Assembly (NCBI GenBank): GCA_001938485.1
Contig: MQRK01237968.1
Span: 1-52,394, forward strand
From: Girardia tigrina
Lineage: Eukaryota
DNA length: 52,394 nucleotides
Direction: 5' to 3'
The translations under genes and the position numbers were made by a program. The notes under the pieces were generated by a model. It saw nothing but the letters and a program-made list of their open reading frames with translations. It did not search any database and was not told where the DNA came from. Below, piece after piece: positions 70 through 48,169 of the stretch (positions are counted from its first letter, which is position 1; each line of letters begins with the position of its first letter).

Positions 70-467
70 TTAAAAAAATGAATTCGGATATAGACGTTGC
101 AACCACTTCTCACAGGAATCATCTTCTAAATCTTTCTTGCCTCCCTTGAATTTGGCAAACCATCGCTGACATTTGCGCANAGTCAGAGATTTCGGATATA
201 CTTTATTTATGCCATAGGTGGCCTCTGTTGCCTTTAAACCGCGGTCAAATTGAAAAAGTATACAATGACGCAAATGTGACTCATCCAATTTGTCTATTTC
301 ATCAATAAAATAATATGACATTTTATCTAAAAATAGGCACAAATCAAAGTTAATACACTAACTGAAATTAATAAATAAAAATGGTAGAGTCAAAATAATG
401 TAGGCGGCAGTTAAACGATTTAGAAAAATATATCAAAAAAAACGACATAACATTTGGGTATCCCTAA
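70..467 (-). mobile_element. mariner transposon 5' fragment (TIR + HTH region of transposase)
   Basis: ORF 70..342 has a mariner N-terminal HTH (HLRHCILFQFDRGLKATEA...CQRWFAKFKGGKKDLED). TIR-like end TTAGGGATACCCAAATGTTATGTCG on minus at ~441-467, flanked by TA. Confidence 0.85.
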
Positions 468-1684: not shown

Positions 1685-3109
1685 CTTAGGCTGTCCCAAA
1701 AGCCCTCAGGAAGCCTTAAAAACACACTAATATTTTACCAAATTTAACCAAATTTGGACTGAATATTATTCAGACTGTCATAAATACTGTGTTAAAATTT
1801 CAAAGCAAAAAATTTGAAACTTACCAAAAAAATAATATTATTAACCAACAAAAAAAATTAGATGCAGCGAATTTAAAAATTTATTTAAAAAAATATTTTA
1901 AAAATTTCTTAAGCAACAACATATTCACCATTGTTGTCAATAACCAACTGACAATAGTTAAAAAGTTTATCTAGTTGATTTTTTAATGTTTCTGTTGATA
2001 AAGAATTAAAATAGAATTTACAAGCTTCTTCAATTTCTTCATGTGATTTTTAAAACTTTTCTTCATTTTTGAAAACAAGAATCTGTCACACAGATTAAAA
2101 TCTGTACTATAAGGCGATTGATATTTTTATTAATTTTTCTTTTTTCAAAAAGAAGAGTTGTTTCTTTGCTAGAATGAGGTCTTGCATTATCATGCCATCA
2201 CTTAAGTTCCTTTAGCTTGATGCTGTTAGATCTAAGTTTCCGCCAATTTTCACCGGTGTCATGAACAAAGTTCACATACGCCTCGGAATCAATCTTGGTA
2301 CCATATGGCAGTGCTTTTACATTAAAACGTTTGTTGCAGGTAAAGGTTACGAAAACAAGAGATTTTTTATCAGTCACTGGCGATGGTTTTATCACTTTTG
2401 GTGGAACAGCATTAGAAGGAATCCAAACTTTGTGATCTTCTTTCTTTCCTCTTGGAAAAAGACCTATGTCTCATCCTCGATCGCTATGTTGAAATATGCT
2501 TCATCACCCATCTGTGAAATTACATGGCATATATGCTTTGCAGTGTTAATGCGTTGTTGTTTATTAGCATCAGAAAGTTCGTGAGGGACCCAGACAGAGT
2601 AAACTTTTTTTGTAATGAAGTTTTTCAAGCAAAAGTTTGTGGACTGTATTTTTGCCCTAAAGAAAGTTCATTTTCAATATAACGCAAAGACGCATTTGGA
2701 GCTTCAACAATCACTTCTTTGACTGCTTTAATCTTTTCATCGTCTATTAATGACGGCCTGCGACTTCTTGATGAATCGTCGAAGGACGTCCGCTTTTCTT
2801 TCTTAAAATCAGTCAACCATTGTTGAATAGTTTTCAGTGCAGGGTGATTTGCGTCTTCCCATGCCTGCTGAAGTTGCTGAAGAATTTCTGAAGCAGAGAA
2901 TCCTCTTTTACTTTGAGTTAGAACAAAAAAACGTTGGTAACATTTATTTGGTTCCATTGTTAATAACCACTTGATTTGAATTCGCTGCACTTTTAAAATT
3001 TCAATACTTTAATGTAACAAAATTTTACTTTTTTTATACTTTGAAATTTTAACACAGTATTTATGAGAGTCTGAATAATATTCAGTCCAAATTTGGTTAA
3101 ATTTGGTAA
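1685..3109 (-). mobile_element. divergent mariner-like element with long (>=71 bp) inverted repeats; decayed transposase
   Basis: Minus-strand pieces: HTH (2625-2990), VWVPHEL (~2580-2600), IEDETY, HDNARPH (~2175-2195), PYSTDFNLCD. Inverted repeat 1735-1805 / 3039-3109 with 1 mismatch. Confidence 0.85.
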
Positions 3110-8596: not shown

Positions 8597-9826
8597 TTCT
8601 TATCCTTTAACAGTCGATAATGAAAGGCCTAAATTTATGACGCCACTCCAGTACGTAGAAAAAGGATAAATAATTAATATATTCAAATTATAATAATTAT
8701 AATTATTTATAAATTAAAATTTAAAAAATATAATGTATAAAAAACGATATTTAAATTAGGATTATCGAAGAATTAAATAATAAGAAATGTATATTTTTTA
8801 CTTTTATTCTCTCCTTGTCATTGTTGGTTTTCAATTTTTTCCTACAAATAAATCATCTCGAGAATCGGTTATTGAACTTTCGCCTTAAAATCCAAAAATT
8901 TGAAGAATCTATTTTTGCAAAATTATTCAAACTCAACCTTTGTTCGTAACATCTGTTGGATCTCGTCCATTTGTTTTTTTTAAATATTAATGTGCTCATG
9001 TGACAACGAAAATATTCAGAGATGGACGGTAAAAATTAGAAAGAAAAATTGAAGGCTGCATTTTACTAAAGAAAAATCAATTCTGGATACAATGAAGGAG
9101 TTGGTAAACTTATGGTGGGGATCATCCAATCCAGAAGAAACATACAAAAAAGCAGAAGGACTTGTGAATATACTAACAAAAGAAAAATTGTATAAAAAAG
9201 AACTACTCAACCTTGCCGGTTTAAATATGGTTGACAGTTATGAAATCAAAAAAGAATTAAAACTGAGGGGAACAACTGAAAAAAATTATATAAAAAGCGT
9301 AGTTACCAATATGTATGAACTACGTAAAATGGAAAGTGCGGAAACAGTGGCAGCATATACGACGGTAAATAAATAAGATAATTGGAACACTGTAACTAGA
9401 CGGAAAAGTGTACACAATGAAAGAACCCCGCATAGACATTACGAACACAACAATAGGAACCAAGGAAATAATGGATTCAAACCGAAAAACAATTATTACA
9501 GAACTGTAAAATGGTATATCTGTCAAGAAGAAGGCCACATAAGAATAGATTACCAAAGTGTGAAGTGTACTCACTGCAACAGAAATGGCCATTATAGAAC
9601 TCAATGTTATCTCATCAAGAATAAATTTAAGGAAAGAGATCAGCACAGTAGAAACAGCGATTGGAAGAAAAAAAATAATGCAGGATACCATAATAGACCT
9701 CAAAATCATCAATACCCAGTTGCGGAAATCGATGAATGCAATGACGACAGCGAATACTAGATTAAATCAAGGAAAGTTAACTAAAAGGGTCTTCCCAGAT
9801 AAGAGACAATGGTATGAAAATAATCA

Positions 9827-9873
9827 GGGAAACGAGGAGGCACGATCGCAAGGAGAGATTATCAATGTGCTTC
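9827..9873 (+). promoter_or_regulatory. candidate -1 ribosomal frameshift signal (gag-pol)
   Basis: Slippery heptamer G GGA AAC 9827-9833 in the gag-end frame. The -1 frame is the protease frame. Downstream stem GAGGCAC (9837-9843) / GTGCTTC (9867-9873). Confidence 0.7.
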
Positions 9874-12800
9874 ATTAAGTGATAAAAATAAGTATAATGG
9901 TTTGTGTGATTGTGTATGTGAATGTGTATGTGATTGTATATGTAATTTTATGACTGGAAATAACCCCCTCGAAGTTTTTAAATTAGATTGTTGAAAAGAA
10001 GAATGTGAAGGAAACTGTTTTAGTAGTAAAATGGAAGAAAAAAGAAGCAAAACGAAGAATGAAGAAATTTTAAAAATAACAAAGCTTAACATTAAATATG
10101 ACAAACTGGATGGTAAACCAAGTATAAATTTTTACATTAAAGAAAGAGAAGTACACTGTCTTTTAGACACCGGTGCTAGAGTAAATGTGATTGAATTAAG
10201 TTTAATTAAAAACATACCAAATATTAGGATTAGAGAATGGCGAAGACGTTTAGCATGCGCAAATGCTTCGGAATTAATAAATTATGGAACAGTACTCTTG
10301 AAGATTAAAATTGAAGGGAACCAAAAGAATATAAAATTCTATGTTGTCAAAGGAATGAACCCAGAAATAATAGCAGGAGTGAACTTTTTGAATAATTTTG
10401 GGATAAAGCTGATTAAGAAATCAATACAAAATAGTGATGTATTTATGATAAGGGATAGCCTATCCGATGAAAACAGATTGAAAAGGATAACGGACCTATA
10501 CGGAGGTAAGGTCGATGATCAGTTAATGAACATTATGAAAAAGTTTAAGTCGATATTCATGGCAGATAAATGGGATATTGGGAAAACATCATTGACAAAA
10601 CACAAAATAGAAACTAATGGTGAACCGGTATTAGTAAAGCCGTATAGACAACCAAGACATTTTGATGAAAAATTAGACGAAGTTATTAAAATTTTGAAGA
10701 AAATGATATAATCGAAAATTGTAGTTCACCATGGAACTTTCCATTGGTATGCGTCTGGAAGAAAGAGAAACAAGAAATACGAGTGTGCATGGATTTTCGA
10801 CAATTAAATAAAGTTACTCTCAGACGAGCATTCCCTATGCCAAATGTGAATGATATGTTGAATACATTGAATGGTACCAAGTATTTCACTACAATTGACT
10901 TGGGAAACGCATACTATCAAGTTGAACTTGATGAAGAATCCGGCAACCTTTCAAGAACTAATGGGGAAAATACTTGGGGAATTGAACTAGAAGGAAGCAG
11001 TCGTATATCTAGACGATATCTTGATATTTTCTAAAGATAAGAACGAACATCTACAAAGAATAAAGAATGTGTTTCAAAAAATCAAAAAATCAGTTTCGAG
11101 GATAAATCCAGAGAAATTTCAATTTCTAGTAGAAAAGACCAAGTTTTGGGGTTATGTAATAAGTAAAGATGGTATAGAAACTGATGAAACAAAGATTGAT
11201 GCGATTAACAAGTTTCAAAACCCATCATATATTAAACATCTAAGGAGTTTCTTGGGTTTGACAAATTATTACAAGAAATTCATAAAAGATTATGCAAGAT
11301 ATTCGAAACTTTTAGAATGCATGTGTGGTAAAAACAAGGATGAGAAAATAATATGGACAAAAGAATGTGACGAAGCTTTTCAGAGATTAAAAGAAAGAAT
11401 GGTTCAAACTCCAATCTTGGCGTATCCAGACTTCGATAAAGAATTTATATTGGACACAGACNNNNNNNNNNNNNNNNNNNNNNNNNNNNNNNNNNNNNNN
11501 NNNNNNNNNNNNNNNNNNNNNNNNNNNNNNNNNTGGTTCTCATAAGATGAATAAACATGAACTTGGTTATTGCATTACCAGAAAAGAATTACTAGCGATA
11601 TATTATTTCACTCAGCATTTTAAGCATTTCTTATATGGGAAAAGATTCTTGTTGCGAACAGACGACAATTATAATTGTTAATTATTTTTATTTTGTATTG
11701 ATTACGAAACAAGTTCACGTAACAATACCTGTTCTGTTAGCTTGTTTCTTGTAGGTAGATACAACAATCTGCAAATTGCTTAATATGTCTTAATATAATA
11801 ATTATTATCGTAACTAAAATTTATTCTGAACTATATCAGAAGGGAAAAAAATATCAAGAGTATTGAGTGTTATATCAAGATAAACAGAAATCAGGTTTGA
11901 TAGGGAAATAAGAATAGTTAGTATATCACTAACTGCTTATGTTCAAAGGCTTCTTCTTTAAGGGTATTGTTGGCGCTAATGGAGTGCAATAAATTCACCT
12001 TGATTTGATGAAAGGGTCTTGAAATTCTTGTTGGAAAGAACTATTCTTGTCGTATTTGATAAAGACTTCGAAGGTAAATAGTAGGAAATATTTGAGTTCT
12101 TCAGAATAGAACTTGAACGTAGCTATAACACTTGGATTAAAGGCTTGACGTTGAAAATCCACGAAATAATAAATAATAATCCACGAAATCTAAGGTAATT
12201 ATTTTAATCAATTTTTTTATTGATTTCTTTATTTATTTTTGCAACCTCAATAGTTTTATCTTCAGATATGTGGGAGATGGACTTCTTAATGTGATATTTA
12301 GAAACAGAATCCTCCTGATTCTTATATTTTTTCCTATCTTGAAAATCTGATTTTAAGTCGTTTTAATCAGAACTGCCTTTATTTTTTTAACTGATTTTGG
12401 ACACTTTTTGGACAAAGCATTCCATTTTTATCACTAATTGATGTAAGGTTTGAACTGCTTCTAACTTGGTCAGAAGACTCTTTATCGGGTTTCCAATCAC
12501 TCGATTTATCTGATTTTGCTTTGATCTTATCTGAATTTGATCCGCGTTTGTCTTATTTTTCTTTCATAGACTGATAATAATTTAATTTAATTTTTTTGAC
12601 TATTTGAAATTTTTATTTCATTTATTTATTCATTTTGTTTTATTTAAATAAAAATTATTTTTATTTTTGTATTGAATTAATTGGTTTTACACAGATGAAC
12701 CTTTTCAGAAGATATATATTGACTTTTGTGGTCCATTCAAGATAAATGTTAATGGATACCAGTATATTTTGGCGATAATTGATCAATTTAGCCGATATAT

Positions 12801-13404
12801 TAGCCTGAATGCAGTTGCTCACCAAGACGAGAAAACGCTACGGAAAATATTGCTGGATAGATGGATATATAAATATGGACCACCTAAAGAAATCCATGTG
12901 GATAGAGGCAAAACATTTGAATCAGAACTATTTAAAGAAACACTGAAGAAGTTTAAGATAGAAGTATTTTATTCAAGCCCGTATCACCACAATGTCAATG
13001 GAATTATAGAACGACAATTTAGAATAATTAGAGATGCTCTTAATATCAGAATAAAGGATGAAACGCATAGAGATTGGACGGAAGTAATGTCAAAAATAGA
13101 AGTTATGATGAAAAGTACCATTCAAGCCACGACACGTATCTCACCAGCAGAAATAATATATGGAAGGAAATTAAGACATTGGTGGAAAAAGAAAGAAGAT
13201 AAAAGAAACCAAATGGGAAAAGAAGAAAAAGCTCCAAAAACGAGAAGAATTTTTAAAGTTAGAGACCAGGAATAAACGACCGATATATTGGCCCTGCATT
13301 GATAATAAGACGGAGACATGAAAGAAGTTACGAATTGCAACTCGACAATGGTAAAATACTAATAAGAAATGTAGAATGACTAAAGCCATTTAAATCGAGA
13401 GGGA

Positions 13405-13845
13405 TGTGAGTGAAAATTTGGAATGTTGTAAGTTTGTTGTTTGTATGCTGTTTAGATTTATGAGTGTCCTACTCAGATGGGATTGATATGTTTATTGATT
13501 GATTATTTAAATCTAATGAAATTAATTTAATGATATTAATTTTAATTAAAGTTTTATAATTATGAATTTGAATAATATTTTTAGTAAACGATTTTAACTT
13601 ATTAAATTTAATATATTTTAAAAATTAATGTTTATTTAAAAATTACTTAATACCTTTTTATCCAATAGAATTATGAGAAATTAAAAGTTAACATTAAAAA
13701 ATTTCCCATTTATGTGTTTTTTTAGATTTGAATATATTAACAAAAAACTATATCAAACAAAGGAAGATGCCCTTTGAGAATTGTTGTGAAGAATCTGTTT
13801 GTGTTGTCAATATATGTTTACGTTCAAATTGTGATGTTGTTAATA
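13405..13845 (+). repeat. 3' LTR, subfamily A (TG...TA termini)
   Basis: Follows the PPT. Homology with the solo LTRs at 16109 and 46003 stops exactly at GTTG(T/C)TAATA. Confidence 0.9.
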
Positions 13846-14539: not shown

Positions 14540-15809
14540 TTAGGTTGTTCCAAAAGGAATGCAGGTTTTTGATTTTTTATTTAGCGCGATGTTATATGAC
14601 TAAAGCATGTATGATGTTATGAATCATTCGAAATCATATGAATCATATATACTCTTTCAGATATATTTATCTAAAACTTATTATAATGTTTCTTTTGTTA
14701 ATAATTTCGATTTTAATTGCAGATATCAAATAGTGATTTTTGCAACATTTACTTCTACGACTTCAAGATGGGGCGTAATGCAGTTCAAACCGCTCGAATA
14801 ATCAAGGAAGTTTGGTGCAAAGGAAATGTCATCGAATGCAAGGTGCAGCGCTGGTATCAAAGGTTTCGCTCTGGAAATACCAGCCTGGAAGATGAGCATC
14901 ACGATAGCCACCCATCGATGATTGACAACGACGAATTGAAGAAGCTGGTGGAAGCCGATCATGTTCGAGCATTCACAGAAGAGTTAAACATTGATATCTC
15001 AACCATCATTTGGTACTTGAAGCAAATTGGAAAGTCGAAAAAGCTCTATAAATGAGTGCCTCCCGAATTGAACAAAAGCCAAACAAAGTGTCGTTTTGAG
15101 GTGTCTTTCGCGCTTCTTCTACGCAACAAGAACGGCCAGATTCTCATTGGGATTGTGACGTGTGATGAGAAGTGAATTCTCTACAACAATCGGCGACGTT
15201 TGGCACAATGATTTGACCGGATGAGGCTCCTCACTACTTTCCGAAACCGAAACTTCACCAAAAGAAGGTTATGGTGACTATTTGGTGGTCTATAGCCAGT
15301 CTCATCCATCAAAGCTTTCTGAATACGAGTGAAACGATCACGGCAGTGAAGTACTGCCAACAAATTGACAAAATGCATCACGAGCTTCGAAATATGTGCC
15401 CGAGCTTGGTCAATATGAAGGGGCCAATTCTCCTCCTGTACAATGCCCGGCCACACACTGCAAAACCGACCCTACAAAAGCTAAACAAATTCGGTTGCAA
15501 AACTCTGCCTCATTCACCCTACTCACCGAACGTCTCGTCCACCGGCTACCATTTTTTCATGCATCTGGACAACTTACTCCAGGAAAAATGCTTCAAAAAA
15601 CAAGACGACGCCAAAGACGCCATTAACGCTTTCATCGCATTCAGAACTCAGATGTTTTACACTAGGGGCATCAATAAACTGGGATCTCGGTGGCAAAAAT
15701 GTATTAGTTCAGATGATTTTTATTTCAATAAATAAAGTTTATTTTGTGCTGAGTTACATTTGTTTAAAGTTTAGGTTCAAAAACATACATTGCTTTTGCA
15801 ACAACCTAA
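14540..15809 (+). mobile_element. full-length decayed mariner (cecropia-like)
   Basis: TIRs TTAGGTTGTTCCAAAAG... / ...CTTTTGCAACAACCTAA with TA flanks. Motifs IVTCDEK, (D>Y)NARPH, YSP. Multiple stops and frameshifts. Confidence 0.95.
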
Positions 15810-16108: not shown

Positions 16109-16559
16109 TGTGAGGGATAATTTGGAATGTTGTAAGTTTGTTGTTTGAATGCTGTTTAGATTTGTGACTCTCCTACTCAGATGGGATTGATATGTTATTT
16201 GATTAATTATTTGAATCTAATGAAATTAATTTAATGATATTAAATTAAAGTANNNNNNNNNNNNNNNNNNNNNNNNNNNNNNNNNNNNNNNNNNNNNNNN
16301 NNNNNNNNNNNNNNNNNNNNNNNNNATATTTTTCAAAATTAATGTTTATTTTAAAAATTACATAATGTCTTTTTATCCAATAAAAATTATGAGAAATTAA
16401 AATGTAATATTAATATTTCCCCATTCATTAATTTTTTCATATTTGAATATGTAATCAAAAACTATATCAATCAAAGAAAGATGACCTCTGAAAATTGTTG
16501 TGAAGAATCTGTTTGTGTTGTGAAAAAATGTTTGCATTCAAATTGTGATGTTGTTAATA
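16109..16559 (+). repeat. solo LTR, subfamily A, 5-bp TSD TGGGT
   Basis: Homologous to 13405-13845. TGGGT at 16104-16108 and 16560-16564. Contains an N-gap. Confidence 0.92.
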
Positions 16560-17999: not shown

Positions 18000-19927
18000 A
18001 ATTGGAATTAATTCAAACGCCAAAATTAAGAATGCAGCCTTTTTAACTAAATCAATATTTACAAAAGATTGGATGGGTATTAACGACCCTTTAATTTGAA
18101 GTATAGACCCCCAAAATGAGTGGGGGCACTAATGATCAAGGATCCGAATGAAGATCGGTATTCAAGCGGAATTTTCTTAACTGTGACTCTATTATCTTTT
18201 CGATTCAAGTTGATGTCGACGAAATAAACATAAACAGTTCGATAGCCATTGGGGCAGCATTGGAAGTTAAAGGAAATATTATAGAAGACTCACCGTGGTT
18301 AAGGAAAACTGACGATTCTAGGCACATAAACGTAGCAGAACTAAATTTCTAACTAAGTGTCTAAATTTGTGTACTAAATGGGGACTAACGAATGTTGTAG
18401 TAAAATCAGATAACAAATCAGTTGTTTCTTAGATAACTGAGGCACGATCAGAGCAAAATAAATTACACGCGAAAGTCTCTTCCGAGATATTGATAAAGCT
18501 CCGATTGTCAATGATTAAGGAGTTGTGTCAGGAATACGAAATAACTTTGAAAATTGAGTTTGTTAATAGTGAAGACAACAAGGCTGATGAACTTACAAGA
18601 ATACCAAAACAATTAAAACGAAGAAGTTGCCTTTTGTCTGTAACAGATGACCTATTAAAATTACAGAAACTTCATGACAGATGTCATTTATGTGCAAAGA
18701 TAATGTTATATCTGTGCGATAAGTTGGAAATAAATGTGTCAAATGCGGATATAAAGGATTTCATCTCGAAGTGTCAAAGTTGCCAATCTATTGATCCGGT
18801 GCCAATAAAATGGGAAACTGGAAAATTAGCTGTCAATGAAAACTGGATAAGACTTCCAGTGGAGGTCACAAAATTTGATCAACAAAAATTCTTAAGTATC
18901 ATTGATTGTGGACCCTCTCAATTTACTGTATGGAAAGTAATCAAGGCTGAGGACGTCAAGTCGATTGTTACAGAGTTTTCAAATTTGTTCTGCGAGTGTG
19001 GATCCCCCAAGGAGTTGATTATTGACAAGTATACGACATTTCATTCAGCTGAATTTAGCAAGTTGATGGAGAAGTGGAATGTTCATGTCTTATACCGCGT
19101 TTTTAATCGACCAAATTGCAAAATAGAGAGAAATCATAAGACAATCAAGAGAATCACATCTAGATCGAATATCAGTATCATGGAAGCCTTATGGTGGTAT
19201 AACAATACACCGTCCGACGGAAAGGAGACACCTAGTTCAAAACTTTACAAGTACGTTCCAGTCGGTTTGGAGATATTCGAAAGAATTGAAAATGAGCCGG
19301 TTTACAATAAGGTAAAGACAGACTTCGTAGAGCAACAGTTAGTCTGAGTAAGGCCTGAAAATAATATGCCATGTACAAAGCAATGGACAAGAGGTGTTGT
19401 CGTTAGAAAATTGGATCAAAGAAAGTACTTAATAAATTGTGATGGTTTTTGCGGTCCACGGCATATAACAGATATTCGACCAAGACAACTAGACATGCCT
19501 CGAAACTCTTACTCCGATTACATGTTGGAAAATAACAACGAATCACCTTCGAGTGTTAAGCAAAGTGAACCGGAAATCAGCAACAGACCCCAAAGAGAAA
19601 GACGAAAACCGAAATATCTGAACGAGTATGTAGTAGATATAGATTCTTGTGACGAAGAATCTGGGGGGAATGTTACATGTTAAATTTATTTATTAAATGA
19701 AATATTTAACATGAAAAAAGTATTGATATTTATTTGTTTAAATAAGATCTATTAAAAAGTATTTTGTGTTTAAAAATAAATTTTATAGATTTGTTATTCG
19801 TTGTTACATATATTTTGTCTCTATTTTTGATATGAGTATTTTTGATAAACCTGCTGTCATAGTTCCAAAAGATAGGTATAACGAGCTTTTCCTTTACTTC
19901 TTTTCAACATACATTGAAGGTACAACA
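18000..19927 (+). mobile_element. Gypsy-type retrotransposon 3' half (RNase H-integrase-PPT-LTR), second lineage
   Basis: EDSPWLRK..DSRHINVAEL (RNase H), HHCC zinc finger and integrase core in ORF 18490..19347, PPT GGGGGGAA then TGTTAC at 19671. LTR end uncertain (19909 or 19927). Confidence 0.85.
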
Positions 19928-21261: not shown

Positions 21262-22895
21262 TATAAAGAACATTAATTGGGTTTTCTTTACATTTATTTA
21301 TATCACAATTTGAATTGTCACTACAACAATTCTCCGTAAAACTTGCGTAGCTCGTCATCGTTCTTGATTGATAATCTTTAATAATATTCTTTAATGTCTT
21401 ATTATTCAAACAAATTTAATTTACAATTTAATTATTATAAAAATAATTTATACTTTAAATTTAAAATAATTTTTATTTATTTTAAGACAATATTATTAAA
21501 ATATTATTTATGGAATATTAGGTTAATTATAAAGTGATTATTTAAATTTTTGTAATTGATTAAACAACCCGATGTTTTAAAATATTTAAAATATCAATCT
21601 TCCATCTGGGTGGGAGAAAAACAATCCTAAAACAACATACCAAACAACACACAATAAACACCATTCAAAAATATTCCTCACATCCCCCTCGATTTAAATG
21701 GCTTTAGCCATTCTACATTCCTTATCAAAATTCCAATTATTGTCTAATTCAAATTCATAACTTCTTTCGTGTCTACGGTTCTTTATTGTTGCCGGACCCA
21801 TATATCGATCTTCTTTTGTTATGTTTTCTCTCTTTATCAACACCTTGTCACCAACTTGAAAAGTTCGATTTGTCTCTACTACATTTTTGCTCTTTTCTTT
21901 CCTAACCTTTTCTTCCTTCGTATTTTTCCACCAATGTCTTAACTTCCTGACAAATATTATTTCCGCTGTTGAGACGCTTATAGTAGCTTGAATTGTGCTA
22001 TTTAACATAAATTCTACCTCTGGTAAAATTTCCGTCCAGTCTTTGTGAGTTTCATCTTTCATTCGTATATTTATGGCATCTCTAATTGTTCTGAATTGTC
22101 ACTCCACGATTCCCTTGATATTGTGGTAGTAGGGGCTGGAATATACTATTTCATTTTTAAATTTATTCATTATGTCTTTAAAAAGTGCTGATTCGAATGT
22201 TTTTCCTCTATCGACATGTATTTCTTTTGGTGGTCCGAATTTCCAAATTCATTTGTCTGGTAATACTTTTCTTACGGTTTTCTCGTCTTGATGGGCAACG
22301 ACATTTAAACTTATGTATCTGCTAAATTGATCGATTATCGCTAGTATGTATTGATATCCATTAATATTTCCTTTAAATGGTCCGCAGAAATCCATGTATA
22401 GTTTTTGGAAGAGTTCATCTGCAAATTGTTTCACGTGCTTTTCTTATGTTTTCCTTGTTAAGGTCTTTCTCTTCTGACAATTTACACAGCTTTTTACCAC
22501 TTCCTTTATCGTTTCTTTCATATCATTCATATCAAAGTCATCTTTTAAATAATTGTAAACTTTCTTGCTACCAGCGTGACATCTTGTGTCACTCCACAAA
22601 TTCAGTTCTTTTGATTCTCGGGATCCATTTTATCCATTGTGGTCACGATGTCATCTTTCAGTACCCATTTCTTTGTTTTCCCAGTTCTAAGATAGTCTCT
22701 GATTTGGTTTATCTCATCATTATCTTTCTGCCATCTGAATTCTTTTGATTCATCGTCAAGGGCTAAGATTCTTGTTTTAATTTTTCTTTTCTTAGCTTCT
22801 TCGTGCGTCGTCTGACATTGTACACACATTTCGCAGGAATTCCTCTACATGACATCGGCGTTAGTATTTTTCGCCTTTTCATTATTCCATTTTCA
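21262..22895 (-). mobile_element. Gypsy 3' part (RH-IN linker, integrase, PPT, 3' LTR 21682-21262), subfamily C
   Basis: MDFCGPF...AIIDQFSR integrase, PPT GAGGGGGA 21683-21690, LTR starts TGTGAGG and ends AATGTTCTTTATA by alignment to subfamily B ends. Confidence 0.9.
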
Positions 22896-25678: not shown

Positions 25679-25715
<37 letters not shown>

Positions 25716-25899
25716 NNNNNNNNNNNNNNNNNNNNNNNNNNNNNNNNNNNNNNNNNNNNNNNNNNNNNNNNNNNNNNNNNNNNNNNNNNNNNNNNNNNNN
25801 NNNNNNNNNNNTATATATATATATATAAGCTAATAAAAAGAATGGAAAAACATTAGTGTTTGGATCTGATAAAAATACTGGAACCAGTAGCAAAGGGGA

Positions 25900-26914: not shown

Positions 26915-27416
26915 TGTGAGGAATATTTTAAATTGTTTGAATGTGTAAATGTAGTGATGCGGTATGTTGATTTAAGTATGTTGAATTTAGAATGGTGATT
27001 CTCGCACCCAGATGGAAATTGGTATTTTTTATTAAGTTTAAAGTGATTGACTATTCGAACATAATTAAAATAATCATTTGATAAGTTCATATTTGTAATT
27101 TCACAATTAAAATTAAGTTTAATAATTTTTAGCAAAATTTAAATTAAATGCATTTTTAATAATTTGATGACATTTTTATTATTTTAAGAATTATTGAGAA
27201 ATGGTAAAACTTATTATTTTTAAATTAATATTTTTAGAGGTTAAATATTTTAAAAAATAATTTAGAAAAACTTGTTCGAATAATCATGATTAACAACAGA
27301 AATAAGAAAACCAATTAGAACGATGGCAAACGATGAAAGACTTTCTGAGAGTCATAATGACTCCAAATGTGATTGTAATAAAGATTCAAACGCGACTTGT
27401 TTAAATGTTCTCAATA
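26915..27416 (+). repeat. solo LTR, subfamily B, TSD GTCCT/ATCCT
   Basis: High similarity (inverted) to LTR 30678-30176. Ends TGTGAGG...GTTCTCAATA. 5-bp flanks differ by one transition. Confidence 0.9.
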
Positions 27417-29139: not shown

Positions 29140-30170
29140 TAATCTTCAAAGTATTCACCATTAGCATCTATGGTCTTTTGCCATCTTTTTGGCAATAAAA
29201 AAGATGTCTTTGGTGAAAAAGTCTTCATCTTTCGAATCAATGAAGTCATCTATGCACTTCTTGAAATGTTGTCCAGAGAGATAATGTAGGAGAGACGGAA
29301 ATATATGAAAATCTGTTGGAGTCAAGTCCGGTAAATAAGGTAGATGCGGTAGAACCTTCCATCCAAGCGGTAAAATAATATTTTTCGTCACCAACGCAAC
29401 ATCGGGTCTAGCGTTATCATGCAGCAGTATGCCATTGGGTCCACTTTGGCCCACATATTTCCTTAACTCGCTGATTTTTTCGTTCAGCTTAGATAGCTGA
29501 TCACAATAGCGCTATGTGATAACTGTTTGCCCGGGATCCAACAGCTCATAATAAAGAAGGCCGTTCATATCACAACACATACACGGATGGAATTTCCTGC
29601 CATGAATATTAATGGAGTTCCGGGGTCTATCCATTGCCTCTTTCGTTTTGGGTTATCATAACACACTCATTTCTCATCCCCAGTGACGATTTTCCATAAA
29701 AACGATTTTCTTCGATTGCTGGTGAGGTGAGCCATAGCGATATTCATTCTATCGTCCTTGTTTCTGGAAGAGAGAGCATGTGGGACCCATCTTGTTGCTT
29801 TCTATACCTTTCCTAGAACTTACAGACGCCGTAGGACTGTCAACTGGTTATCGTTGACAAACTTGGCCAGTTCAGGGGTTGATTGACAATCATCCTCTCT
29901 TAAGAGAACCAGAAGCCCGTCGTCCTTCATTTCTTTTAGTCTACCATTTTGTGGCTGGTCCTCCAGGTTGAATTCGCTCTTCTTGAACTTGGTATACGAT
30001 TCTTTGATCATTGTAAGGCCAACAGAACCTGTACCATATGCTTGGTAAATTTCATCCTTCGTTTGCGACGCCTTTTTGCCAAGATTAAACATAAATAATA
30101 TACAGTGGTGTATGTGATTTTTATGGGTATCAATTTCCTGAATAATAAAAAAATTAACACGTGGATTTTC
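29140..30170 (-). mobile_element. mariner transposase body; its 5' end is displaced to 33707-33763 by a Gypsy insertion
   Basis: HTH (29820-30092), WVPHAL, IVTGDEK, LHDNARP, PYLPDLTPTD. TIR-like TTAGGTCGATGCATAAGTTTCCGA on minus at 33740-33763. Confidence 0.9.
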
Positions 30171-31808
30171 GGGACTATTAAGAACATTTAGACAAGTCTC
30201 GCTTGAATTTTTATTACAATCACTTTTAGAGTCATTAAGACTCTCAGAAGGTCTTTAATCGTTTGCCATAGTTCTAATTGGTTTTCTTATTTCTATTTTT
30301 AATCATGATTATTCGAACAATTTTTAAGTCATTTTTTAAAATATTTAACTTCTAAAAAATATTAATTAAATAATAATAATTTTTACCATTTCTCAATAAA
30401 TCCCAAAATAATAAAAATGTCATCAAATTATTAAAAATGCATTTAATTTAAATTTTACTTAAAAATATTAAACTTAAATTTAATTGTTAAATTAAAAAAA
30501 TATGAACTTATAAAATGATTATTTTAATTATGTTCGAATAGACAATCACTTTAAATTTAAATAAAAAATACCAATTTCCATCTGGGTGGGAGAATCACCA
30601 TTCTAAATTCAACATACTTAAATCAACATACAACATCACTACATTTACACATTCAAACAATTTAAAATATTCCTCACATCCCCTCGGTTTAAATGGCTTA
30701 AACCATTTTTCATTTCTGATCAAAATCCTGTCGTCATCTAGTTGTATCTTAAACTTCCTTTGTATCTTTGCTTTATAATTTTAGCTGGTTCCATATAGCG
30801 GTCATCATCTTTTGATGGGTTAACTTTCTTTATCAATACTTTATCTCCGACCTGAAATATTCGCTTTGTTTCAATTGTATTTTTATTTTCTTTTTCTCCA
30901 ATTTTTCCTTCAGTTGTGTTCTTCCACCAATGTCTGAGTTTTCTTTCGAAGATTATCTCGGCTGAAGATATTCCTGTAGTTGCTTGAATTGTACCGTTTA
31001 ATATGAATTCTATTTCTACCAACATTTTTTCCTGTAATAGTCTACTGAAAACCTCTCGCATATTTTTTTATGTAAACACTTCGTCATTTCTTTTTGTACA
31101 TTATTTGATGATTTTTTTTGTTTTTTCGTAATTCTTATTATTGCGCCTAGTCTTTTTGTCTATCTTTTTATATATTTTTTTAATTTTTTTATGCAAGTCC
31201 AAAGTTATATAACGACAATATTATTACAATTACGTTTGTCTTGATTTTGTAATTTTTAAAAGAAAGAAAGAAAGAAGAAGAAGGATAAGAAGAAAAAGAG
31301 AAGGAGCAAATTCGTTGTTTCTCCGATCTCGTAAAACCAAAAGCCAGCCATTCATTCATAATATTATTTATTATCTACTTGGGAATACGATTATTAAATT
31401 TCAAGGTTTGAATTTGAATTTAAAAAAATCAATACACAAATTAATTAAATTATATCTAATTGAAAGTAACTTATTATCGCTGATTGTCGACAACTATTCC
31501 GAGAAAACCGAATATATCTGAGAATTATTCTATTTTGTCTGACATTTATTATTTTACTAACTTTGGTGACAACATATGATATCAATTGTGAGTGATTGTT
31601 TAGTGAATAAAAAGAAGTTAATTGTTGTAAACAAGATTCTTACATTATTGTATTTGTTAAAGTTATTCATTTTTTTTACAATTTTAACAAGTCCACCGAA
31701 CAAGCTCTTTGTTCTATTAACTTGGTTAGATTTTTCTTATATACTATAAAAAAAATAAAGTTTCCATTACCAATAAGATAGACCAGCGAATACTTTATTT
31801 TTTTATAG

Positions 31809-32600
31809 TGGTGTCAGAAGGCAAACATAGACTCCCCTCATAACAATCATAGCCATTTTAATACATTAAATCTCACAACAAACAGTAATTTCATAACACA
31901 ACACAACTCAACATAACAACAACAACACGCACTCACAGACAACACATAACACAACATACACAATAACAATTCTTAGATAAAAAAAAATACAAAAAAATAC
32001 AACAAACCAAAAACAAAGCCCTTTCAAAACAAACAATCAAGAATGTTCCCAGTGACAGAACAAATCAAACAATTACGACAGAAATAACAACAGCACTACA
32101 ACACTAAGAATACCAAATGAAGAAACAACTATTAATCATCTTTCAAACATCACGAACAATAACTTAGAACAATCTTAATTCTACAAATCACTCAAAGAAA
32201 AATTAAACAAAATCGAGAAAAACAAAGAATTTACAAAAACATTTTTTCTACGAGCATTACCCGATAACATTAGAATGGCACTCATCACTGCCAATACCAA
32301 ATCAAATGAGGAAATGGTAAAATTAGCAGACAAGCTCTATACCGAGTACAATTACCAAGTGAACAACATTCAATCATACAAAAAAGGCCAAGGAAACAAC
32401 AACACAGATATATTAACTAACATTAACAATCAACTGGAGAAATTCAAATAACAATACCAATCCATAGAAAAAAGACTAAACAACCTTGAAATAATACAAA
32501 ACAAATATACATTCCTCAATAAATCTAGTAAAAACCCAAAACTAATAGAAAACGATAAACAAAGTTCAAGGTGTTGGTATCACGAAAAATATGAATCACG
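31809..32600 (+). mobile_element. CsRN1-like Gypsy 5' fragment: PBS + gag remnant
   Basis: PBS TGGTGTCAGAAG (complement of a tRNA-Leu 3' end). FLRALPDNIRMALIT...MVKLADKLY and CWYHEKY are gag motifs typical of CsRN1-type elements. Strongly A/C-skewed. Confidence 0.7.
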
Positions 32601-33011
32601 AAAAAAATGGCATATCATTCCTCTGCCAAATAAACTCATCTGAATCTTCAGTCAATGCAAGTATTCTAGTTTTAACTTTTCCTTTTTTAGCGTCATCGTG
32701 CATTGTCTGACATTGTACACATAGTTCACATGTATTTCTTGACATTGCGTCTGCATTAGTGTCTTTCGCCTTTGCGGTATTCCATCCTCATTTCTAGTCC
32801 ACTAAGGAAGTTTATCCAAGTTTGAAATTGTGGAGTTATTGGGTTCTTCGTTGTCATCATGAATGTGATGGCCTTATGGTCCGTTCTAAGTAGAAAATTC
32901 TATCCGTATAAGAAATGTTTGAAGTGTCGGGTGAAGTAATAGTTTGCTAATAATTTCTTTTTTTATAATACAATATCCCAGTTCGTGTTTGTTCATCTTG
33001 TGGGATCCATA

Positions 33012-33495
33012 TGCAATTACTCTTTCCCTTCCGTATGCATCCTGTGCAAGTACATATTGTTTATGAATATAAATGTAATGGGTGCGATGTCACATTCATT
33101 GGAGAGACTGCCCGTCATCTCTGTATACGAATTCAAGAAGAAGGTCGAAAAGAGTGTAAGAGTAATATTGCAGAACATAAGAAAAAATGTAAATGTGATG
33201 TTAATTTTGATAATTTCAAAATTCTCTGTAAGCATTTTGACAGTTATTGGGAGAGAGTGTCGTGTGAAGCATTGTTAATTAGGTTACGTTGTCCTAAACT
33301 CAATGTTCAATCGGCAGTCTCAACCAGCTTATTGAGAATTTTTGATTAGCATGATTTCATGCAATCGATTACATAATCATCATTTTTGTATTTATATACA
33401 GGTGCATTGATTATTAATTAGTGACCTGAAGATGACGGTAGATCCGTAGACATATATTGTCTATAAATATATTTTTTAATAGATGAGTGTTGTTT
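33012..33495 (+). mobile_element. Penelope-like element 3' end (GIY-YIG endonuclease + 3' UTR)
   Basis: ORF 33011..33349: IVYEYKCNGCDVTFIGETARHL..R..E...S.IAEH...NFKIL...R..EALLI...P.LN, the PLE GIY-YIG pattern. Confidence 0.9.
33423..33461 (+). ncRNA. degenerate minimal hammerhead ribozyme of the Penelope element
   Basis: GAC-CTGAAGA-T-GACGG-TAGAT-CCGT(A)-GACA(expected GAAA)-TATATT-GTC: core box, stem II and a 3-bp stem I are present, with two substitutions. Confidence 0.6.
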
Positions 33496-33989
33496 TTAAT
33501 TTTAATTGTTAAATTAAAAAAATATGAACTTATAAAATAATTATTTTAATTATGTTCGAATTGTTAATCACTTTAAATTTAAATAAATAAAATACCAATT
33601 TCCATCTGGGTGGGAGAATCACCATTCTAAATTCAACATACTTAAATCAACACACATCATCAATACATTTACACATTCACAATTTTAAAATATTCCTCAC
33701 AGGGACAATTAAAGAAGTAAATCAATTTTTTATCAAAGGTCGGAAACTTATGCATCGACCTAACAGTAGTAAAATTTTGCTTTGTTTAAATGCAAAAAAT
33801 TAAAAATTTTTGTTTGTGAATGGAGTAAATTGTTAAAATTTTTGAAAACTTTGTTTTGAAGACTTGTTGTCACATAATTATGCAAGCAAAAGGGTCGTTG
33901 AAAAAATAGTTTTGGAATAAAATATTTTTCAATTTCTGGACGAACCGATATGCTCTTCGGTGTTATATTGACCAGATTATTATGTTATA

Positions 33990-45299: not shown

Positions 45300-46460
45300 A
45301 TTGGAGCTCACGGCACGACACCAGAATTCCATATATTTTTTTACGGCATACCCTTGAACCAGAATCGGCATTCGCCATAGAGTTAAGAAATTCTAATGGT
45401 CACTGTATAGATTCCACTAGGGTCGGTTACACTCCTCAACCTCTGTTGCGCAACAGCCATGAGTAAAATTTCTGTCTTCTCATGTAGTTTTGCACAATTG
45501 CGATTAAGGTTATTTATCCGTTTTAACTGATTTTCATTTACAAGCCGTCCATGAAAACTATTAGCAACATCACAACTTGAGTGTAAACATTTAATAACAA
45601 CACAAACATTTTCCATAGCAATTTCTGTGGGAAGCGTCATTCTTGATTAATGTTTTTGTATATTCTTTCAAATCTTAAAATTAATTAATGGTACAAGTTT
45701 AATATTAACTTTTTATTTCTCAAATTTTATTGGATAAAAATGCATTAAGTAATTTTTAAAATAAACATTAATTTTTAAAATATATTAGATTCAATAACTT
45801 AAAATCGTTTACTAAAAATATTATTAAAATTTATAATTATAAAACTTTTAATTAATTAATATTTAAAAATTAATCTCATTAAATTAATTTCATTAGATTT
45901 AAATAATTAATCAATAACATATCAATCCCATCNGAGTAGGAGAGTCANAAATCTAAACAGCATACAAACAACAAACTTANAACATCCCGAATTTTCCCTC
46001 ACAAAAACCTTGCCTTGTAAACCCTCATATATNTCTCTATGGTGGAGAACAGTTGAACAACCAGGGTTGCTTTTTCCTTGGAGGTGAACGGTCTGACTCC
46101 GCATATAACTCATCAGAACGCCTTAATATNGAATAGNTATTAGTAGAATAGCTACTAGGCTCCNATGACTTCTTACTAACATCTTGTTACACTTATTCTA
46201 GNGTTTTTCTCTAGGATTGCCTGTAATCCATGGAAGGATTTATATAATTCACTCACTTGTCTATTAATTATACCCGACTGGTCGTTNTAATTTTATTGTA
46301 TNTGAAACCGAAGCTCATCTTCTCCATATAGTCTTCTTCCGCCTGAATCATCCTCTATGAAATCCGAAAATACTTANCATTAACACTGACAAGGGTAAGG
46401 TCTTTTGTATGTAAGCTCTGAAAACTGCAATCCTCTAATAATTTTGATGAANCATAATTA
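45300..46460 (-). mobile_element. non-LTR retrotransposon remnant (post-RT region, R4/RLE-like), split by a solo LTR
   Basis: DSGGRRL (GGRGL-like), LQGKVF|HGRL and KLHEKTEILLMAVAQQRL resemble the K.LHG...L..ETE..I.A.Q.Q.L region of such LINEs. Confidence 0.55.
45559..46003 (-). repeat. solo LTR, subfamily A-like, 5-bp TSD GTTTT
   Basis: Homologous to the 13405 and 16109 copies. Plus-strand AAAAC at 45554-45558 and 46004-46008. Ends GTTGCTAATA. Confidence 0.92.
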
Positions 46461-46589
46461 GTGGGACAGATTAAATTTATAACATGCACAAAATAAATAA
46501 AGTNAAAATATAAATGAATATGTTNATAAAAAACAAACTAAATCGTATTCTAATTTTTATGCAATACANGGTTTTCCACTTAATTTAAT

Positions 46590-46925: not shown

Positions 46926-47829
46926 TTGTAAGGGCTTTTTTAAATAAATTTAAACAAGATATATTTAGGTATTTTGACTAATTTTTCTTATGAAAGACTT
47001 TTGTAGGAATCATCTGAAGGATTTGGACAAGGAATGATGAGAACCATTTCCATTTGAATAGAATATTTTATTCAATTTTCAAAGCCTAGGAAACAATTTT
47101 ATTTTATGTTCTATATATAATACGAACCTCTTTATTCTAACTTCAAACTCTTTGGTAAGATCAACTATTTATTTTCTGATTCTCGACAATTTAACTTATA
47201 AAATTTTAATTTTACTTAACAAAAATACGTGATTATTTTATAAGACCTAATAGAAATAAATTATTAAATATTAAACTATTTTGCATCAGTGTGGATTAGA
47301 AAAGCAAGGGAAATTTATTTTCAAAAAGAAGGAATAATTTAATTGCATCAATTTTTTCGCTTTTAATCCTTTCATACCGACTTTTGTACAAAAAAATTAA
47401 ATTTACTTTCAATTATTTTTGATAAATTTAGAGAAAAGTTTTATAATTTTAATACTTTCGTTTCACTTGTAAAATGTACAAAAGAGTGAAAGGAGAAAGG
47501 ATTTTAAATTCTAAAATAAACAATTTTTGATTATATATTATATTTAATATTTTGTTTATACGTGTTTATACAAAACATTTAATTCTTAACACATTGTCTA
47601 CCGGTCATGAGTTAACTCGAGTTTGCCCGTCACATTAAATAGATTCAGTCAGGCATTATTCTAACGTGTAGTTGAGACAAAAATGTGTAGTTGAGAAAGT
47701 ATTTTGTGCAGTTGAAATCACGATTTCAATATTAGATGTAGCACTTGTCGTGTATTTCGGCATAAAATGTAATTTTCACGTTTGTTTGAAAGGTTTTTGG
47801 TCAGTTTTGTGTATTATAACAGTATTTTA

Positions 47830-48165
47830 AAACTTAATTTTTAAATAGCTCATTAATCTTCTGGAATATTTCTGAGGGAATTTTATCCGCGATTTAAATC
47901 TCTTTAAACTCATTCATTATCTCTAAGATATTTTTCTATTTAAAAATGCATTTCTAATCCCTGTTTCCTAGCTGTATCCTGGTGTTTTATCATATTTGAT
48001 GATTGTGTCTGGTTTCATCAATGTTGTTAGAAATACCGCTGCGCATTCTTTTCTTAAATACCATAATTTTTGCCTATATGTCGAACATTATTAGGAATTC
48101 TTCAAATTTTACTCCTGTCCCGTAGAATTTATCCTGTCCTCTAATAATTAGTGTCACTTATTCAT
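47830..48165 (-). mobile_element. Gypsy gag N-terminal remnant homologous to the gag at 9020
   Basis: IIRGQDKFYGTG..FEEF...KYDKTPGYS*ETGIRNAFLNRKNILEIMNEF.....P.EIFQKINEL aligns with KYSEMDGKN*KEKLKAAFTKEKSILDTMKEL.....PEETYKKAEGL. Confidence 0.6.
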
Positions 48166-48169
48166 TGTG

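What the first reader, a model, noticed from the sequence alone, without database searches (positions are those of the whole stretch)
13767..13845. Phase-conserved Cys-rich reading frame starts inside the LTR and exits its 3' end in all six complete copies
Seen: each complete LTR has an ATG after a similar CAA...GAA context, and its frame runs to the LTR end. The copies are 13767-13845 MPFENCCEESVCVVNICLRSNCDVVN (79 nt); 16481-16559 MTSENCCEESVCVVKKCLHSNCDVVN (79); 45640-45559 MTLPTEIAMENVCVVIKCLHSSCDVAN (82); 21358-21262 MTSYASFTENCCSDNSNCDINKCKENPINVLY (97); 27323-27416 MANDERLSESHNDSKCDCNKDSNATCLNVLN (94); 30269-30176 (94, one GAA>TAA). Four different lengths are all 3n+1, and five of six frames are stop-free in very AT-rich DNA across three diverged subfamilies. 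All end (D/N)V(V/A/L)(N/Y). Inference: the LTR end is protein-coding and is translated across the LTR/PBS junction. It could be a Gag N-terminus (yeast Ty1 gag is known to start in the LTR) or a separate, undescribed accessory or regulatory ORF. The gag remnant near 48165 hints that gag may have its own start, which would favour an extra gene. No intact 5' LTR-internal junction survives in this window.
Basis: partly seen in the sequence, partly recalled or inferred. Interest (0 to 1): 0.85.

Follow-up and report, generated by a model that had tools for sequence, protein, structure and literature searches.

The report
Gag gene starts inside the LTR
The short Cys-rich reading frame at the end of each long terminal repeat is the first 22-32 codons of the retrotransposon's capsid (gag) gene, which in intact relatives reads across the repeat's last base and the primer binding site into gag; this layout is known from yeast Ty1, and all six copies here are dead duplicates.

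Summary
All six LTR copies carry an ATG 79-97 nt before the LTR end, always 3n+1, and five of six frames are stop-free.

All six are 3' or solo LTRs. 5-nt target-site duplications fix the LTR end at the final A of ..AATA.

Intact relatives settle what it is. Eleven distinct full-length Gag clusters from public assemblies begin with a 20-54 aa leader followed by an invariant N-M-A-T. Three of these leaders match the window's three LTR subfamilies:
- P0059 to A13/B16: 85-89%
- P0058 to D21: 96%
- P0027 to E27: 90%

DNA of two relatives (L002, L004) shows LTR end, then TGGCGAC (the primer binding site), then gag, in one frame. The last LTR A plus TG forms the Met codon.

So the frame is the 5' end of gag, not an extra gene. 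Use of the LTR ATG as the start is inferred, not shown. Supporting it: conserved out-of-frame ATGs lie behind it, a purine sits at -3, and the sequence upstream is ATG-free.

The leader also overlaps an AATAAA-type hexamer and T/G-rich U5, which explains the N-K and Cys codons. This is the Ty1-like layout in a Ty3/gypsy-type family.

The parts
13767..13845 (+). Copy of the gag leader (26 codons + 1 nt) in LTR A13. This is the finding's interval.
   Evidence: Translation. 85% identical to residues 1-26 of the intact Gag P0059 (tblastn E 4e-8).
13405..13845 (+). LTR A13 (441 nt), the 3' LTR of element A. It starts TGTGAG and ends AATA.
   Evidence: Alignments. Polypurine tract and integrase remnant lie directly upstream.
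13397..13404 (+). Polypurine tract of element A
   Evidence: Purine run directly before the LTR start, shared with D21 and F30.
8912..9875 (+). gag remnant of element A (broken). The leader and about the first 52 codons are missing; at least one in-frame stop and one frameshift.
   Evidence: tblastn with P0059 residues 53-376, 77-90% identity. CCHC knuckle present.
9959..13403 (+). pol remnant of element A (protease, RT, RNase H, integrase). Broken by at least four frameshifts, one assembly gap of N, and about 1 kb without recognisable coding.
   Evidence: Pfam. tblastn with P0017 and the L004 pol.
16109..16559 (+). Solo LTR B16, flanked by the duplication TGGGT. Its leader copy is at 16481-16559. 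It contains an N gap.
   Evidence: Leader 89% identical to P0059 residues 1-28.
45559..46003 (-). Solo LTR C45, flanked by GTTTT. Leader copy at 45559-45640, with one 2-nt indel relative to A13/B16 and a non-homologous ATG.
   Evidence: P0059 residues 9-26 match at 78%.
21262..21682 (-). LTR D21 (421 nt), the 3' LTR of element D. Leader copy at 21262-21358; the frame is open further upstream, to 21409.
   Evidence: P0058 residues 1-48 match 21266-21409 at 96%, E 2e-24.
21673..22871 (-). pol remnant of element D (RNase H end and integrase), broken
   Evidence: tblastn. Inverted repeat I1 with element A.
26915..27416 (+). Solo LTR E27 (502 nt), flanked by GTCCT/ATCCT. Leader copy at 27323-27416.
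   Evidence: P0027 residues 1-31 match at 90%, E 2e-12.
30176..30678 (-). LTR F30 (503 nt), the 3' LTR of element F. Leader copy at 30176-30269, with one in-frame stop.
   Evidence: P0027 residues 1-31 match at 77%.
30759..33053 (-). pol remnant of element F (RNase H and integrase pieces), broken and with large deletions
   Evidence: tblastn.
33496..33701 (-). Truncated 5' LTR of element F (first ~205 nt only). The part that would hold the leader, the primer binding site and gag are deleted.
   Evidence: blastn. The same 5-nt duplication GTCCC lies at 33702-33706 and 30171-30175.
47825..48166 (-). gag remnant of a further, more distant lineage (broken).
   Evidence: tblastn with P0027 residues 38-148 at 39% and P0058 residues 53-159 at 33%. 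No convincing LTR upstream.

Best explanation
The frame is the 5' end of the gag gene of a Ty3/gypsy-type LTR retrotransposon family.

In a functional element the genomic RNA starts in the 5' LTR upstream of this ATG. Ribosomes start at the LTR ATG and read 12-32 codons of R/U5. They then pass the last LTR base, which together with the TG of the primer binding site TGGCGAC forms a Met codon, so the junction reads N-M-A-T. They continue through the primer binding site into the capsid and zinc-knuckle parts of Gag.

Gag therefore carries a short, probably unstructured, LTR-encoded leader. The same nucleotides also serve as an AATAAA-type poly(A) hexamer (read as N-K), as T/G-rich U5 (read as Cys/Val codons) and as the integrase end of the LTR. 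This explains the composition and the loose conservation of the residues.

Because LTRs are duplicated, every 3' and solo LTR carries a silent copy of these codons. That is what the window shows six times.

Shown: the LTR boundaries, the continuity of the frame with gag in relatives, and the phase. Inferred: that the transcript starts upstream of the ATG, that this ATG is the start used, and the role of the hexamer.
For: 1. LTR ends are fixed by target-site duplications: B16, C45, E27 and the F element.
2. Eleven Gag clusters (P0036/P0025, P0026-P0029, P0058-P0063; 356-403 aa) have a 20-54 aa leader followed by an invariant N-M-A-T.
3. Each window subfamily has a matching intact Gag. P0059 matches A13 at 85% and B16 at 89%, and its body matches element A's gag remnant at 77-90%. 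P0058 matches D21 at 96% over 48 residues. P0027 matches E27 at 90%.
4. DNA of relatives. In L002, a whole LTR homologous to the window's LTRs (104-492) is followed by TGGCGACC and gag in the same frame, with the ATG 67 nt before the LTR end; L001 is the same. In L004 and L006 (Gag only 23% identical), pol end, polypurine tract, a ~600-nt LTR ending CACA, TGGCGAC and gag follow one another, with the ATG 37 nt before the LTR end. Both lengths are 3n+1.
5. Chance is unlikely. Shuffle products are 2.5e-4 for the window lineages and 1.5e-5 for five lineages. Homologous blocks between lineages keep the same frame although the stretches between them differ by 27, 30 and 3 nt (reading of the alignments).
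6. For the LTR ATG as the start. Out-of-frame ATGs at -32 (5 of 8 LTRs) and -12 (7 of 8) lie between it and the junction ATG and would intercept scanning ribosomes. There is a purine at -3 in 8 of 8 LTRs (A in 7). The stretch before it is free of ATG for 32-247 nt.
7. The protein is a Gag. It has CCHC knuckles. The predicted helical core (residues 43-191, pLDDT 70-83) has dArc1, copia and Ty3 capsids as its best PDB matches. The leader, residues 1-36, has pLDDT below 50.
8. Precedent: in yeast Ty1 the primer binding site lies inside the GAG ORF (PMC4974528).
Against: No transcript start, poly(A) site, ribosome or peptide data were available, so use of the LTR ATG is not shown.

Some gene callers started relatives at the junction Met or later (P0046, P0049, P0031). 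The junction ATG has a good context (A at -3, G at +4) in the AATA-type LTRs.

Residues of the leader are only weakly constrained. Between lineages pN is 0.31-0.44 against pS 0.30-0.82, on 19-30 codons with uncertain alignment. Within the E27/F30 pair the stretch is no better conserved than the rest of the LTR.

Some relatives have further in-frame ATGs upstream (P0039, P0058, P0062), so the exact start may vary.

Only two outside lineages could be checked at the DNA level. For the three lineages that match the window, the junction is seen only in protein predictions.
Confidence: 0.75

Rival explanations
1. Gag starts at the junction Met (last LTR base + TG of the primer binding site) or later. 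The LTR frame is kept open and in phase only because any AUG in R/U5 would otherwise create a harmful upstream ORF. At most a minor, N-terminally extended Gag isoform is made, in the manner of the upstream-initiated glyco-Gag of murine leukaemia viruses.
For: The junction ATG is invariant and in a strong context in AATA-type LTRs. Leader residues evolve fast, with pN close to pS in several pairs. Leader length and type vary widely between lineages, 12-54 codons. Some predictions start at the junction Met.
Against: The invariance of the junction ATG is forced by the LTR end and the primer binding site, so it is no evidence for a start.

Conserved out-of-frame ATGs at -32 and -12 lie just before it, and the ORF from the -12 ATG overlaps it.

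The LTR ATG has a purine at -3 in all 8 LTRs and is the first ATG after an ATG-free stretch.

Short motifs are kept at the protein level in leaders of Gags that are only 31-41% identical to P0059.
Confidence: 0.2
2. The frame is a separate, undescribed accessory or regulatory gene encoded in the LTR, independent of gag.
For: It is short, Cys-rich and present in every LTR copy.
Against: In all eleven intact Gag clusters, and in L001, L002, L004 and L006, it runs into gag without a stop. It has no stop of its own inside the LTR. In 3' and solo LTRs it simply runs into unrelated flank.
Confidence: 0.02
3. There is no coding at all. The open frame and Cys codons are a by-product of a T/G-rich poly(A) downstream element in AT-rich DNA.
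For: An AATAAA-type hexamer at -37/-40 and T/G-rich sequence after it are present in most copies.
Against: The same phase is stop-free in five diverged lineages, with a shuffle product of 1.5e-5. Between lineages, the stretches separating the shared blocks differ only by multiples of three (27, 30 and 3 nt). The frame is continuous with gag.
Confidence: 0.02

Closest known systems
Ty1 (and Ty2) of Saccharomyces cerevisiae, Pseudoviridae
   Same: GAG begins in the 5' LTR and the primer binding site lies inside the GAG ORF (PMC4974528). That the AUG lies in the LTR follows from this and is also my own knowledge. R/U5 and the primer binding site thus have both RNA and coding roles.
   Different: Ty1 belongs to the Ty1/copia lineage and uses initiator tRNA-Met. 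The family here has the Ty3/gypsy order protease-RT-RNase H-integrase and a primer binding site that starts TGGCGAC, whose tRNA I could not identify. Its leader is Cys/Asn/Asp-rich or, in some lineages, of a different type.
Ty3 and typical Ty3/gypsy (Metaviridae) elements
   Same: Domain order of pol, CCHC Gag, capsid fold resembling Ty3 and dArc1, 5-nt target duplication, polypurine tract.
   Different: In Ty3 the primer binding site adjoins the 5' UTR, so GAG3 starts downstream of it (PMC4974528). Here gag starts upstream, in the LTR. Full-text searches found no description of this layout in a Ty3/gypsy element, but the library is incomplete, so this is not proof of absence.
Glyco-Gag of murine leukaemia viruses (own knowledge)
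   Same: An in-frame N-terminal extension of Gag encoded by the 5' leader.
   Different: There the upstream start is a non-AUG codon downstream of the primer binding site, outside the LTR, and it yields a second, glycosylated isoform. None of this was tested here.
Genes in retroviral LTRs such as MMTV sag or HIV nef (own knowledge)
   Same: Protein-coding sequence lies inside an LTR.
   Different: Those are separate genes that lie in or run into U3 of the 3' LTR. Here the coding part is the 3' end of the LTR (R/U5), is functional in the 5' LTR, and is part of gag.

Membership tests
LTR retrotransposon of Ty3/gypsy type (Metaviridae-like) | Direct long terminal repeats flanked by a short target-site duplication | tested here: met
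   The 5-nt duplications are exact for B16, C45 and the F element, and 4 of 5 for E27. LTRs are 421-503 nt.
LTR retrotransposon of Ty3/gypsy type (Metaviridae-like) | LTR termini TG...CA | tested here: inconclusive
   LTRs start TGTGAG, but the window's LTRs end ..AATA or ..TATA, not CA. The distant relative L004 ends ..CTCACA, an inverted copy of its start.
LTR retrotransposon of Ty3/gypsy type (Metaviridae-like) | Polypurine tract before the 3' LTR and a primer binding site starting TGG after the 5' LTR | tested here: met
   Polypurine tract before A13, D21, F30 and in L004. TGGCGAC directly after the LTR in L001, L002, L004 and L006. The matching tRNA was not found.
LTR retrotransposon of Ty3/gypsy type (Metaviridae-like) | pol order protease - RT - RNase H - integrase | tested here: met
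   Pfam on window pieces, P0017 and the L004 pol.
LTR retrotransposon of Ty3/gypsy type (Metaviridae-like) | Gag with a retroelement capsid fold and zinc knuckle(s) | tested here: met
   zf-CCHC. Model core pLDDT 70-83. Best PDB matches are dArc1, copia, Ty3 and PNMA2 capsids, with weak E-values (7e-3 to 7e-2) but probability 0.96-1.00.
Ty1-like layout: gag initiates in the 5' LTR | One open frame from an ATG inside the LTR across the LTR end and the primer binding site into gag | tested here: met
   DNA of L001, L002, L004 and L006. Eleven Gag clusters with leader + N-M-A-T. Leaders match the window LTR tails.
Ty1-like layout: gag initiates in the 5' LTR | Transcription starts upstream of that ATG | not testable with these tools
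   Only indirect signs: an ATG-free stretch of 32-247 nt upstream and an AATAAA-type hexamer downstream of the ATG in most lineages.
Ty1-like layout: gag initiates in the 5' LTR | Gag protein carries the LTR-encoded residues | not testable with these tools
   No proteomic or ribosome-profiling data could be reached. Context arguments only.
Separate LTR-encoded accessory gene | Own stop codon, or a product distinct from gag | tested here: not met
   No stop between the LTR ATG and gag in any intact relative.

The most novel reading that the evidence does not exclude
The LTR-encoded Gag leader is a functional, exchangeable module rather than a tolerated extension. Some lineages carry a Cys-rich leader, which could be a site for lipid attachment or metal binding. 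Others (P0026, P0028, P0029) carry a leader that fits the PCNA-interaction (PIP-box) pattern. Change at the LTR end would then directly rewire what Gag binds in the host cell, under the joint constraints of the poly(A) signal, U5, the integration end and the primer binding site.
Probability: 0.15. Interest if true: 0.6.

Novelty: new member of a known kind. Interest (0 to 1): 0.38.

Why it matters
For annotation. In this family gag models that begin after the LTR are truncated at the N-terminus. Short Cys-rich ORFs at the ends of solo and 3' LTRs are duplicates of a gene's first codons, not genes.

For biology. This is a clear case outside yeast Ty1, in a Ty3/gypsy-type family, where about 100 nt must serve several roles at once: promoter-proximal RNA, a probable poly(A) signal, U5, the integrase end, the primer binding site and protein-coding sequence. 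The invariant N-M-A-T at the junction is a direct read-out of nucleic-acid constraints on a protein.

It also gives a simple phase rule that can be used to recognise 5' junctions of this family: the distance from the ATG to the LTR end is 3n+1.

Tried and rejected
**Closed or empty searches**
The contigs of the ENA, Logan and NCBI relatives that match the window's three subfamilies could therefore not be read. For them the junction is seen only at the protein level.
- Scans with no useful result: viral contigs with P0017 and with the Gag alignment, genome contigs with P0053 and with the alignment, and the first metagenome scan with P0053.
There was no Rfam family in the window.
- A search for the contig accession prefixes in papers gave nothing, so the host is not identified.
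- Full-text searches for a described Ty3/gypsy element with gag starting in the LTR gave nothing usable.

**Analyses that led nowhere or were weak**
- A 5' LTR for element A was looked for by blastn and not found.
- The gag remnant near 48165 was examined as a possible surviving junction. Only a weak likeness to the A13 LTR start appeared, at 48613-48674 (z = 3.1; 2 of 200 shuffles reach it). I rejected it as evidence.
- The ATG at -12 was considered as a gag start and rejected. It is out of phase, and in L002 its frame stops after ten codons.
- Nei-Gojobori counts between lineages are too noisy to carry weight (19-30 codons, uncertain alignment).
- L024 has M-A-T-T in a long polyprotein, but without an LTR boundary it says nothing.

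Natural copies were compared as they stand.
Scripts printed translations with '*' or stop-to-stop bounds, which show where frames of broken copies are interrupted. In my reasoning I began to recall primer-binding-site and tRNA letters of known elements from memory.

Full report
**Setting.**
The window is AT-rich (24-35% G+C in 2-kb steps) and consists mostly of decayed mobile elements. It holds Ty3/gypsy-type pol and gag remnants, a mariner-type transposase piece and other integrase-like frames. No tRNA gene and no Rfam family were found. The host is not identified.

**The repeats.**
Six full LTR copies and one fragment are present. They fall into three diverged groups: A13/B16/C45, D21, and E27/F30.

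All start TGTGAG and end ..AATA (D21 ends ..TATA). A13, D21 and F30 are 3' LTRs, each preceded by a polypurine tract and integrase remnants.

B16, C45 and E27 are solo LTRs flanked by 5-nt duplications: TGGGT/TGGGT, GTTTT/GTTTT and GTCCT/ATCCT.

The fragment at 33496-33701 is the truncated 5' LTR of the element that ends with F30, because GTCCC flanks both. These duplications fix the LTR's last base as the final A. This matters for the phase argument.

**The observation.**
From the LTR end backwards, the 3n+1 phase is open for 29-68 codons in five copies, and F30 has one in-frame stop. The other two phases have 0-8 stops over the same stretches.

Dinucleotide shuffles give a stop-free 3n+1 phase in 10%, 3.7% and 6.7% of trials for A13, D21 and E27. 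The product is about 2.5e-4.

One correction. C45 has a 2-nt indel inside the stretch relative to A13/B16, and it uses an ATG that is not homologous to theirs. That is what a decaying solo LTR may show, and it weakens the claim that all six copies are phase-conserved only slightly.

**What it is.**
A phmmer search of 1.84 billion representative proteins with a piece of element A's gag remnant (window 9053-9373) found five full-length Gag proteins. A profile search found six more clusters.

All eleven clusters (356-403 aa) begin with a leader of 20-54 residues, followed by an invariant N-M-A-T and then the conserved Gag body.

Three of the leaders are those of the window's LTRs:
- **A13/B16/C45.** P0059 residues 1-26/28 match A13 at 85% and B16 at 89%. 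Residues 9-26 match C45 at 78%. The body of P0059 matches element A's gag remnant at 77-90%.
- **D21.** P0058 residues 1-48 match at 96%, E 2e-24.
- **E27/F30.** P0027 residues 1-31 match E27 at 90% (E 2e-12) and F30 at 77%.

P0027 and P0036 each stand for many near-identical copies that carry the same leader.

**DNA of the junction.**
One metagenome scan with the Gag alignment nevertheless returned usable contigs.
- **L002** holds a whole LTR (104-492) that aligns with the window's LTRs at the start, at the conserved box near position 70, and over the last ~100 nt. Its ATG lies 67 nt before the LTR end. The LTR's last A is followed by TGGCGACC, and the frame goes straight on into gag.
- **L001** shows the same.
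- **L004 and L006** are a distant lineage, with Gag 23% identical. They show the pol end, a polypurine tract, a ~600-nt LTR ending ..CTCACA, then TGGCGAC and gag. The ATG lies 37 nt before the LTR end.

Both new lengths are again 3n+1. That is what is needed for the LTR's last base plus TG to form the Met codon. With these two lineages added, the shuffle product falls to about 1.5e-5.

**The protein.**
The family's gag has CCHC knuckles. An AlphaFold model of P0036 has a helical core (residues 43-191, pLDDT 70-83) whose best PDB matches are dArc1, copia, Ty3 and PNMA2 capsids. E-values are weak (7e-3 to 7e-2) and the listed probability is 0.96-1.00. Residues 1-36, that is the leader and the junction, have pLDDT below 50. 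pol has the order protease, RT, RNase H, integrase.

**Which ATG starts Gag?**
This is inferred, not shown.

For the LTR ATG:
- Out-of-frame ATGs at -32 (5 of 8 LTRs) and -12 (7 of 8) lie between it and the junction ATG. U5 is always in the genomic RNA, so these would be upstream starts if the LTR ATG were not used. In L002 the frame of the -12 ATG overlaps the junction ATG.
- The LTR ATG has a purine at -3 in 8 of 8 LTRs (A in 7).
- It is the first ATG after an ATG-free stretch of 32-247 nt.

Against:
- The junction ATG is also in a good context.
- Some gene predictions start there.
- The leader's residues are loosely constrained: pN 0.31-0.44 against pS 0.30-0.82 between lineages.

I put the LTR start at about 0.75, and a junction start or a mixture of both at about 0.2.

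**Why Cys, Asn and Lys.**
An AATAAA-type hexamer sits 37 nt (A13, C45, D21, L002) or 40 nt (E27, F30) before the LTR end, exactly in codon register. It is read as N-K. N-K stands at the aligned place in 8 of the 11 Gag leaders. T/G-rich sequence follows, read as Cys and Val codons.

This is the usual place of a poly(A) signal and of U5 in an LTR. The N of N-M-A-T comes from the LTR's terminal AAT-A. The M-A-T comes from the last A plus TGGCGAC.

**Comparison with known systems.**
In yeast Ty1 the primer binding site lies inside the GAG ORF, whereas in Ty3 it adjoins the 5' UTR (PMC4974528). The family here has Ty3/gypsy-type genes but the Ty1-type layout.

I found no description of this layout for a Ty3/gypsy element in the searchable papers. 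That library is incomplete, so I rate this as a new member of a known kind.

**State of the copies in the window.**
- Element A: gag has lost its leader and about 52 codons, and has at least one stop and one frameshift. pol has at least four frameshifts, one N gap and about 1 kb without recognisable coding.
- Elements D and F keep only 3' parts of pol.
- Element F's 5' LTR has lost its 3' half.
- The remnant at 47825-48166 belongs to another lineage and is broken.

**Limits.**
No expression data, no host identity and no primer tRNA were obtained. DNA-level junctions are available for two outside lineages only.

Noticed in passing
Relatives P0026, P0028, P0029 (residues about 3-14); not in the window: Their Gag leaders are not Cys-rich. 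They share a motif that fits the PCNA-interaction (PIP-box) pattern Q-x-x-I-x-x-[FY]-[FYI]. The fit is full in P0026 and P0028 and partial in P0029. By homology of the N-M-A-T junction these residues should also be LTR-encoded, but no DNA was available.
   Followed up: no
Gag C-termini of P0026-P0029, P0036, P0058-P0062; window about 9850-9875 (+): Gag ends with ..E-V-I-(N/S)-(V/A)-L-(N/H/Q), which resembles the end of the leader just before the junction Met ((I/L)-(N/D)-V-(V/L)-N). In L001 there is no likeness at the nucleotide level. It could be a shared protease-site-like motif or chance.
   Followed up: partly
L001 about 1297-1380; window about 9900-9990 (+): pol lies in another frame than gag and seems not to overlap it. 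It opens with a TG-repeat stretch read as Cys/Val/Asp. How pol is expressed (frameshift, readthrough or its own start) is unclear.
   Followed up: no
L004 1860-2520 and L006 1210-1870: Two contigs from different samples show pol end, one LTR and gag in a row. This is either tandem elements sharing an LTR or an assembly collapse of the two LTRs. The pol stop codon lies a few codons inside the LTR.
   Followed up: partly
window 48613-48674 (-): A weak likeness to the start of LTR A13 (z = 3.1; 2 of 200 shuffles reach it) lies about 450 nt upstream of the gag remnant at 47825-48166. It could be the start of a very diverged 5' LTR, or chance.
   Followed up: partly
window 70-342 (-), 2625-2990 (-), 14717-15735 (+), 29161-30092 (-), 35374-35673 (-), 37140-37448 (-): Several mariner/Mos1-like transposase fragments. 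Only 15271-15735 was tested (Pfam Transposase_1); the others are judged by eye from the translations.
   Followed up: partly
window 18490-19683 (+) and 39467-39934 (+): Integrase-like frames of other retroelement lineages. There is a weak tblastn match of the L004 pol at 18697-19149 and a sub-threshold Integrase_H2C2 match (E 0.002, 18.6 bits, cut-off 25.5) at 39467-39934.
   Followed up: no
window 42694-43158 (-): An ORF whose end reads like the first C2H2 finger of a Snail/Scratch-type zinc-finger protein. It is possibly a host exon and a sign of an animal host. Judged by eye only.
   Followed up: no
window 25695-25827: The 'perfect' inverted repeats reported here span the N run 25716-25811 and are an artefact of N pairing with N. 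TA-rich simple repeats flank the gap.
   Followed up: yes
window 45933-46770: About twenty single N bases are scattered through this stretch, including inside LTR C45. They were left as they are.
   Followed up: no
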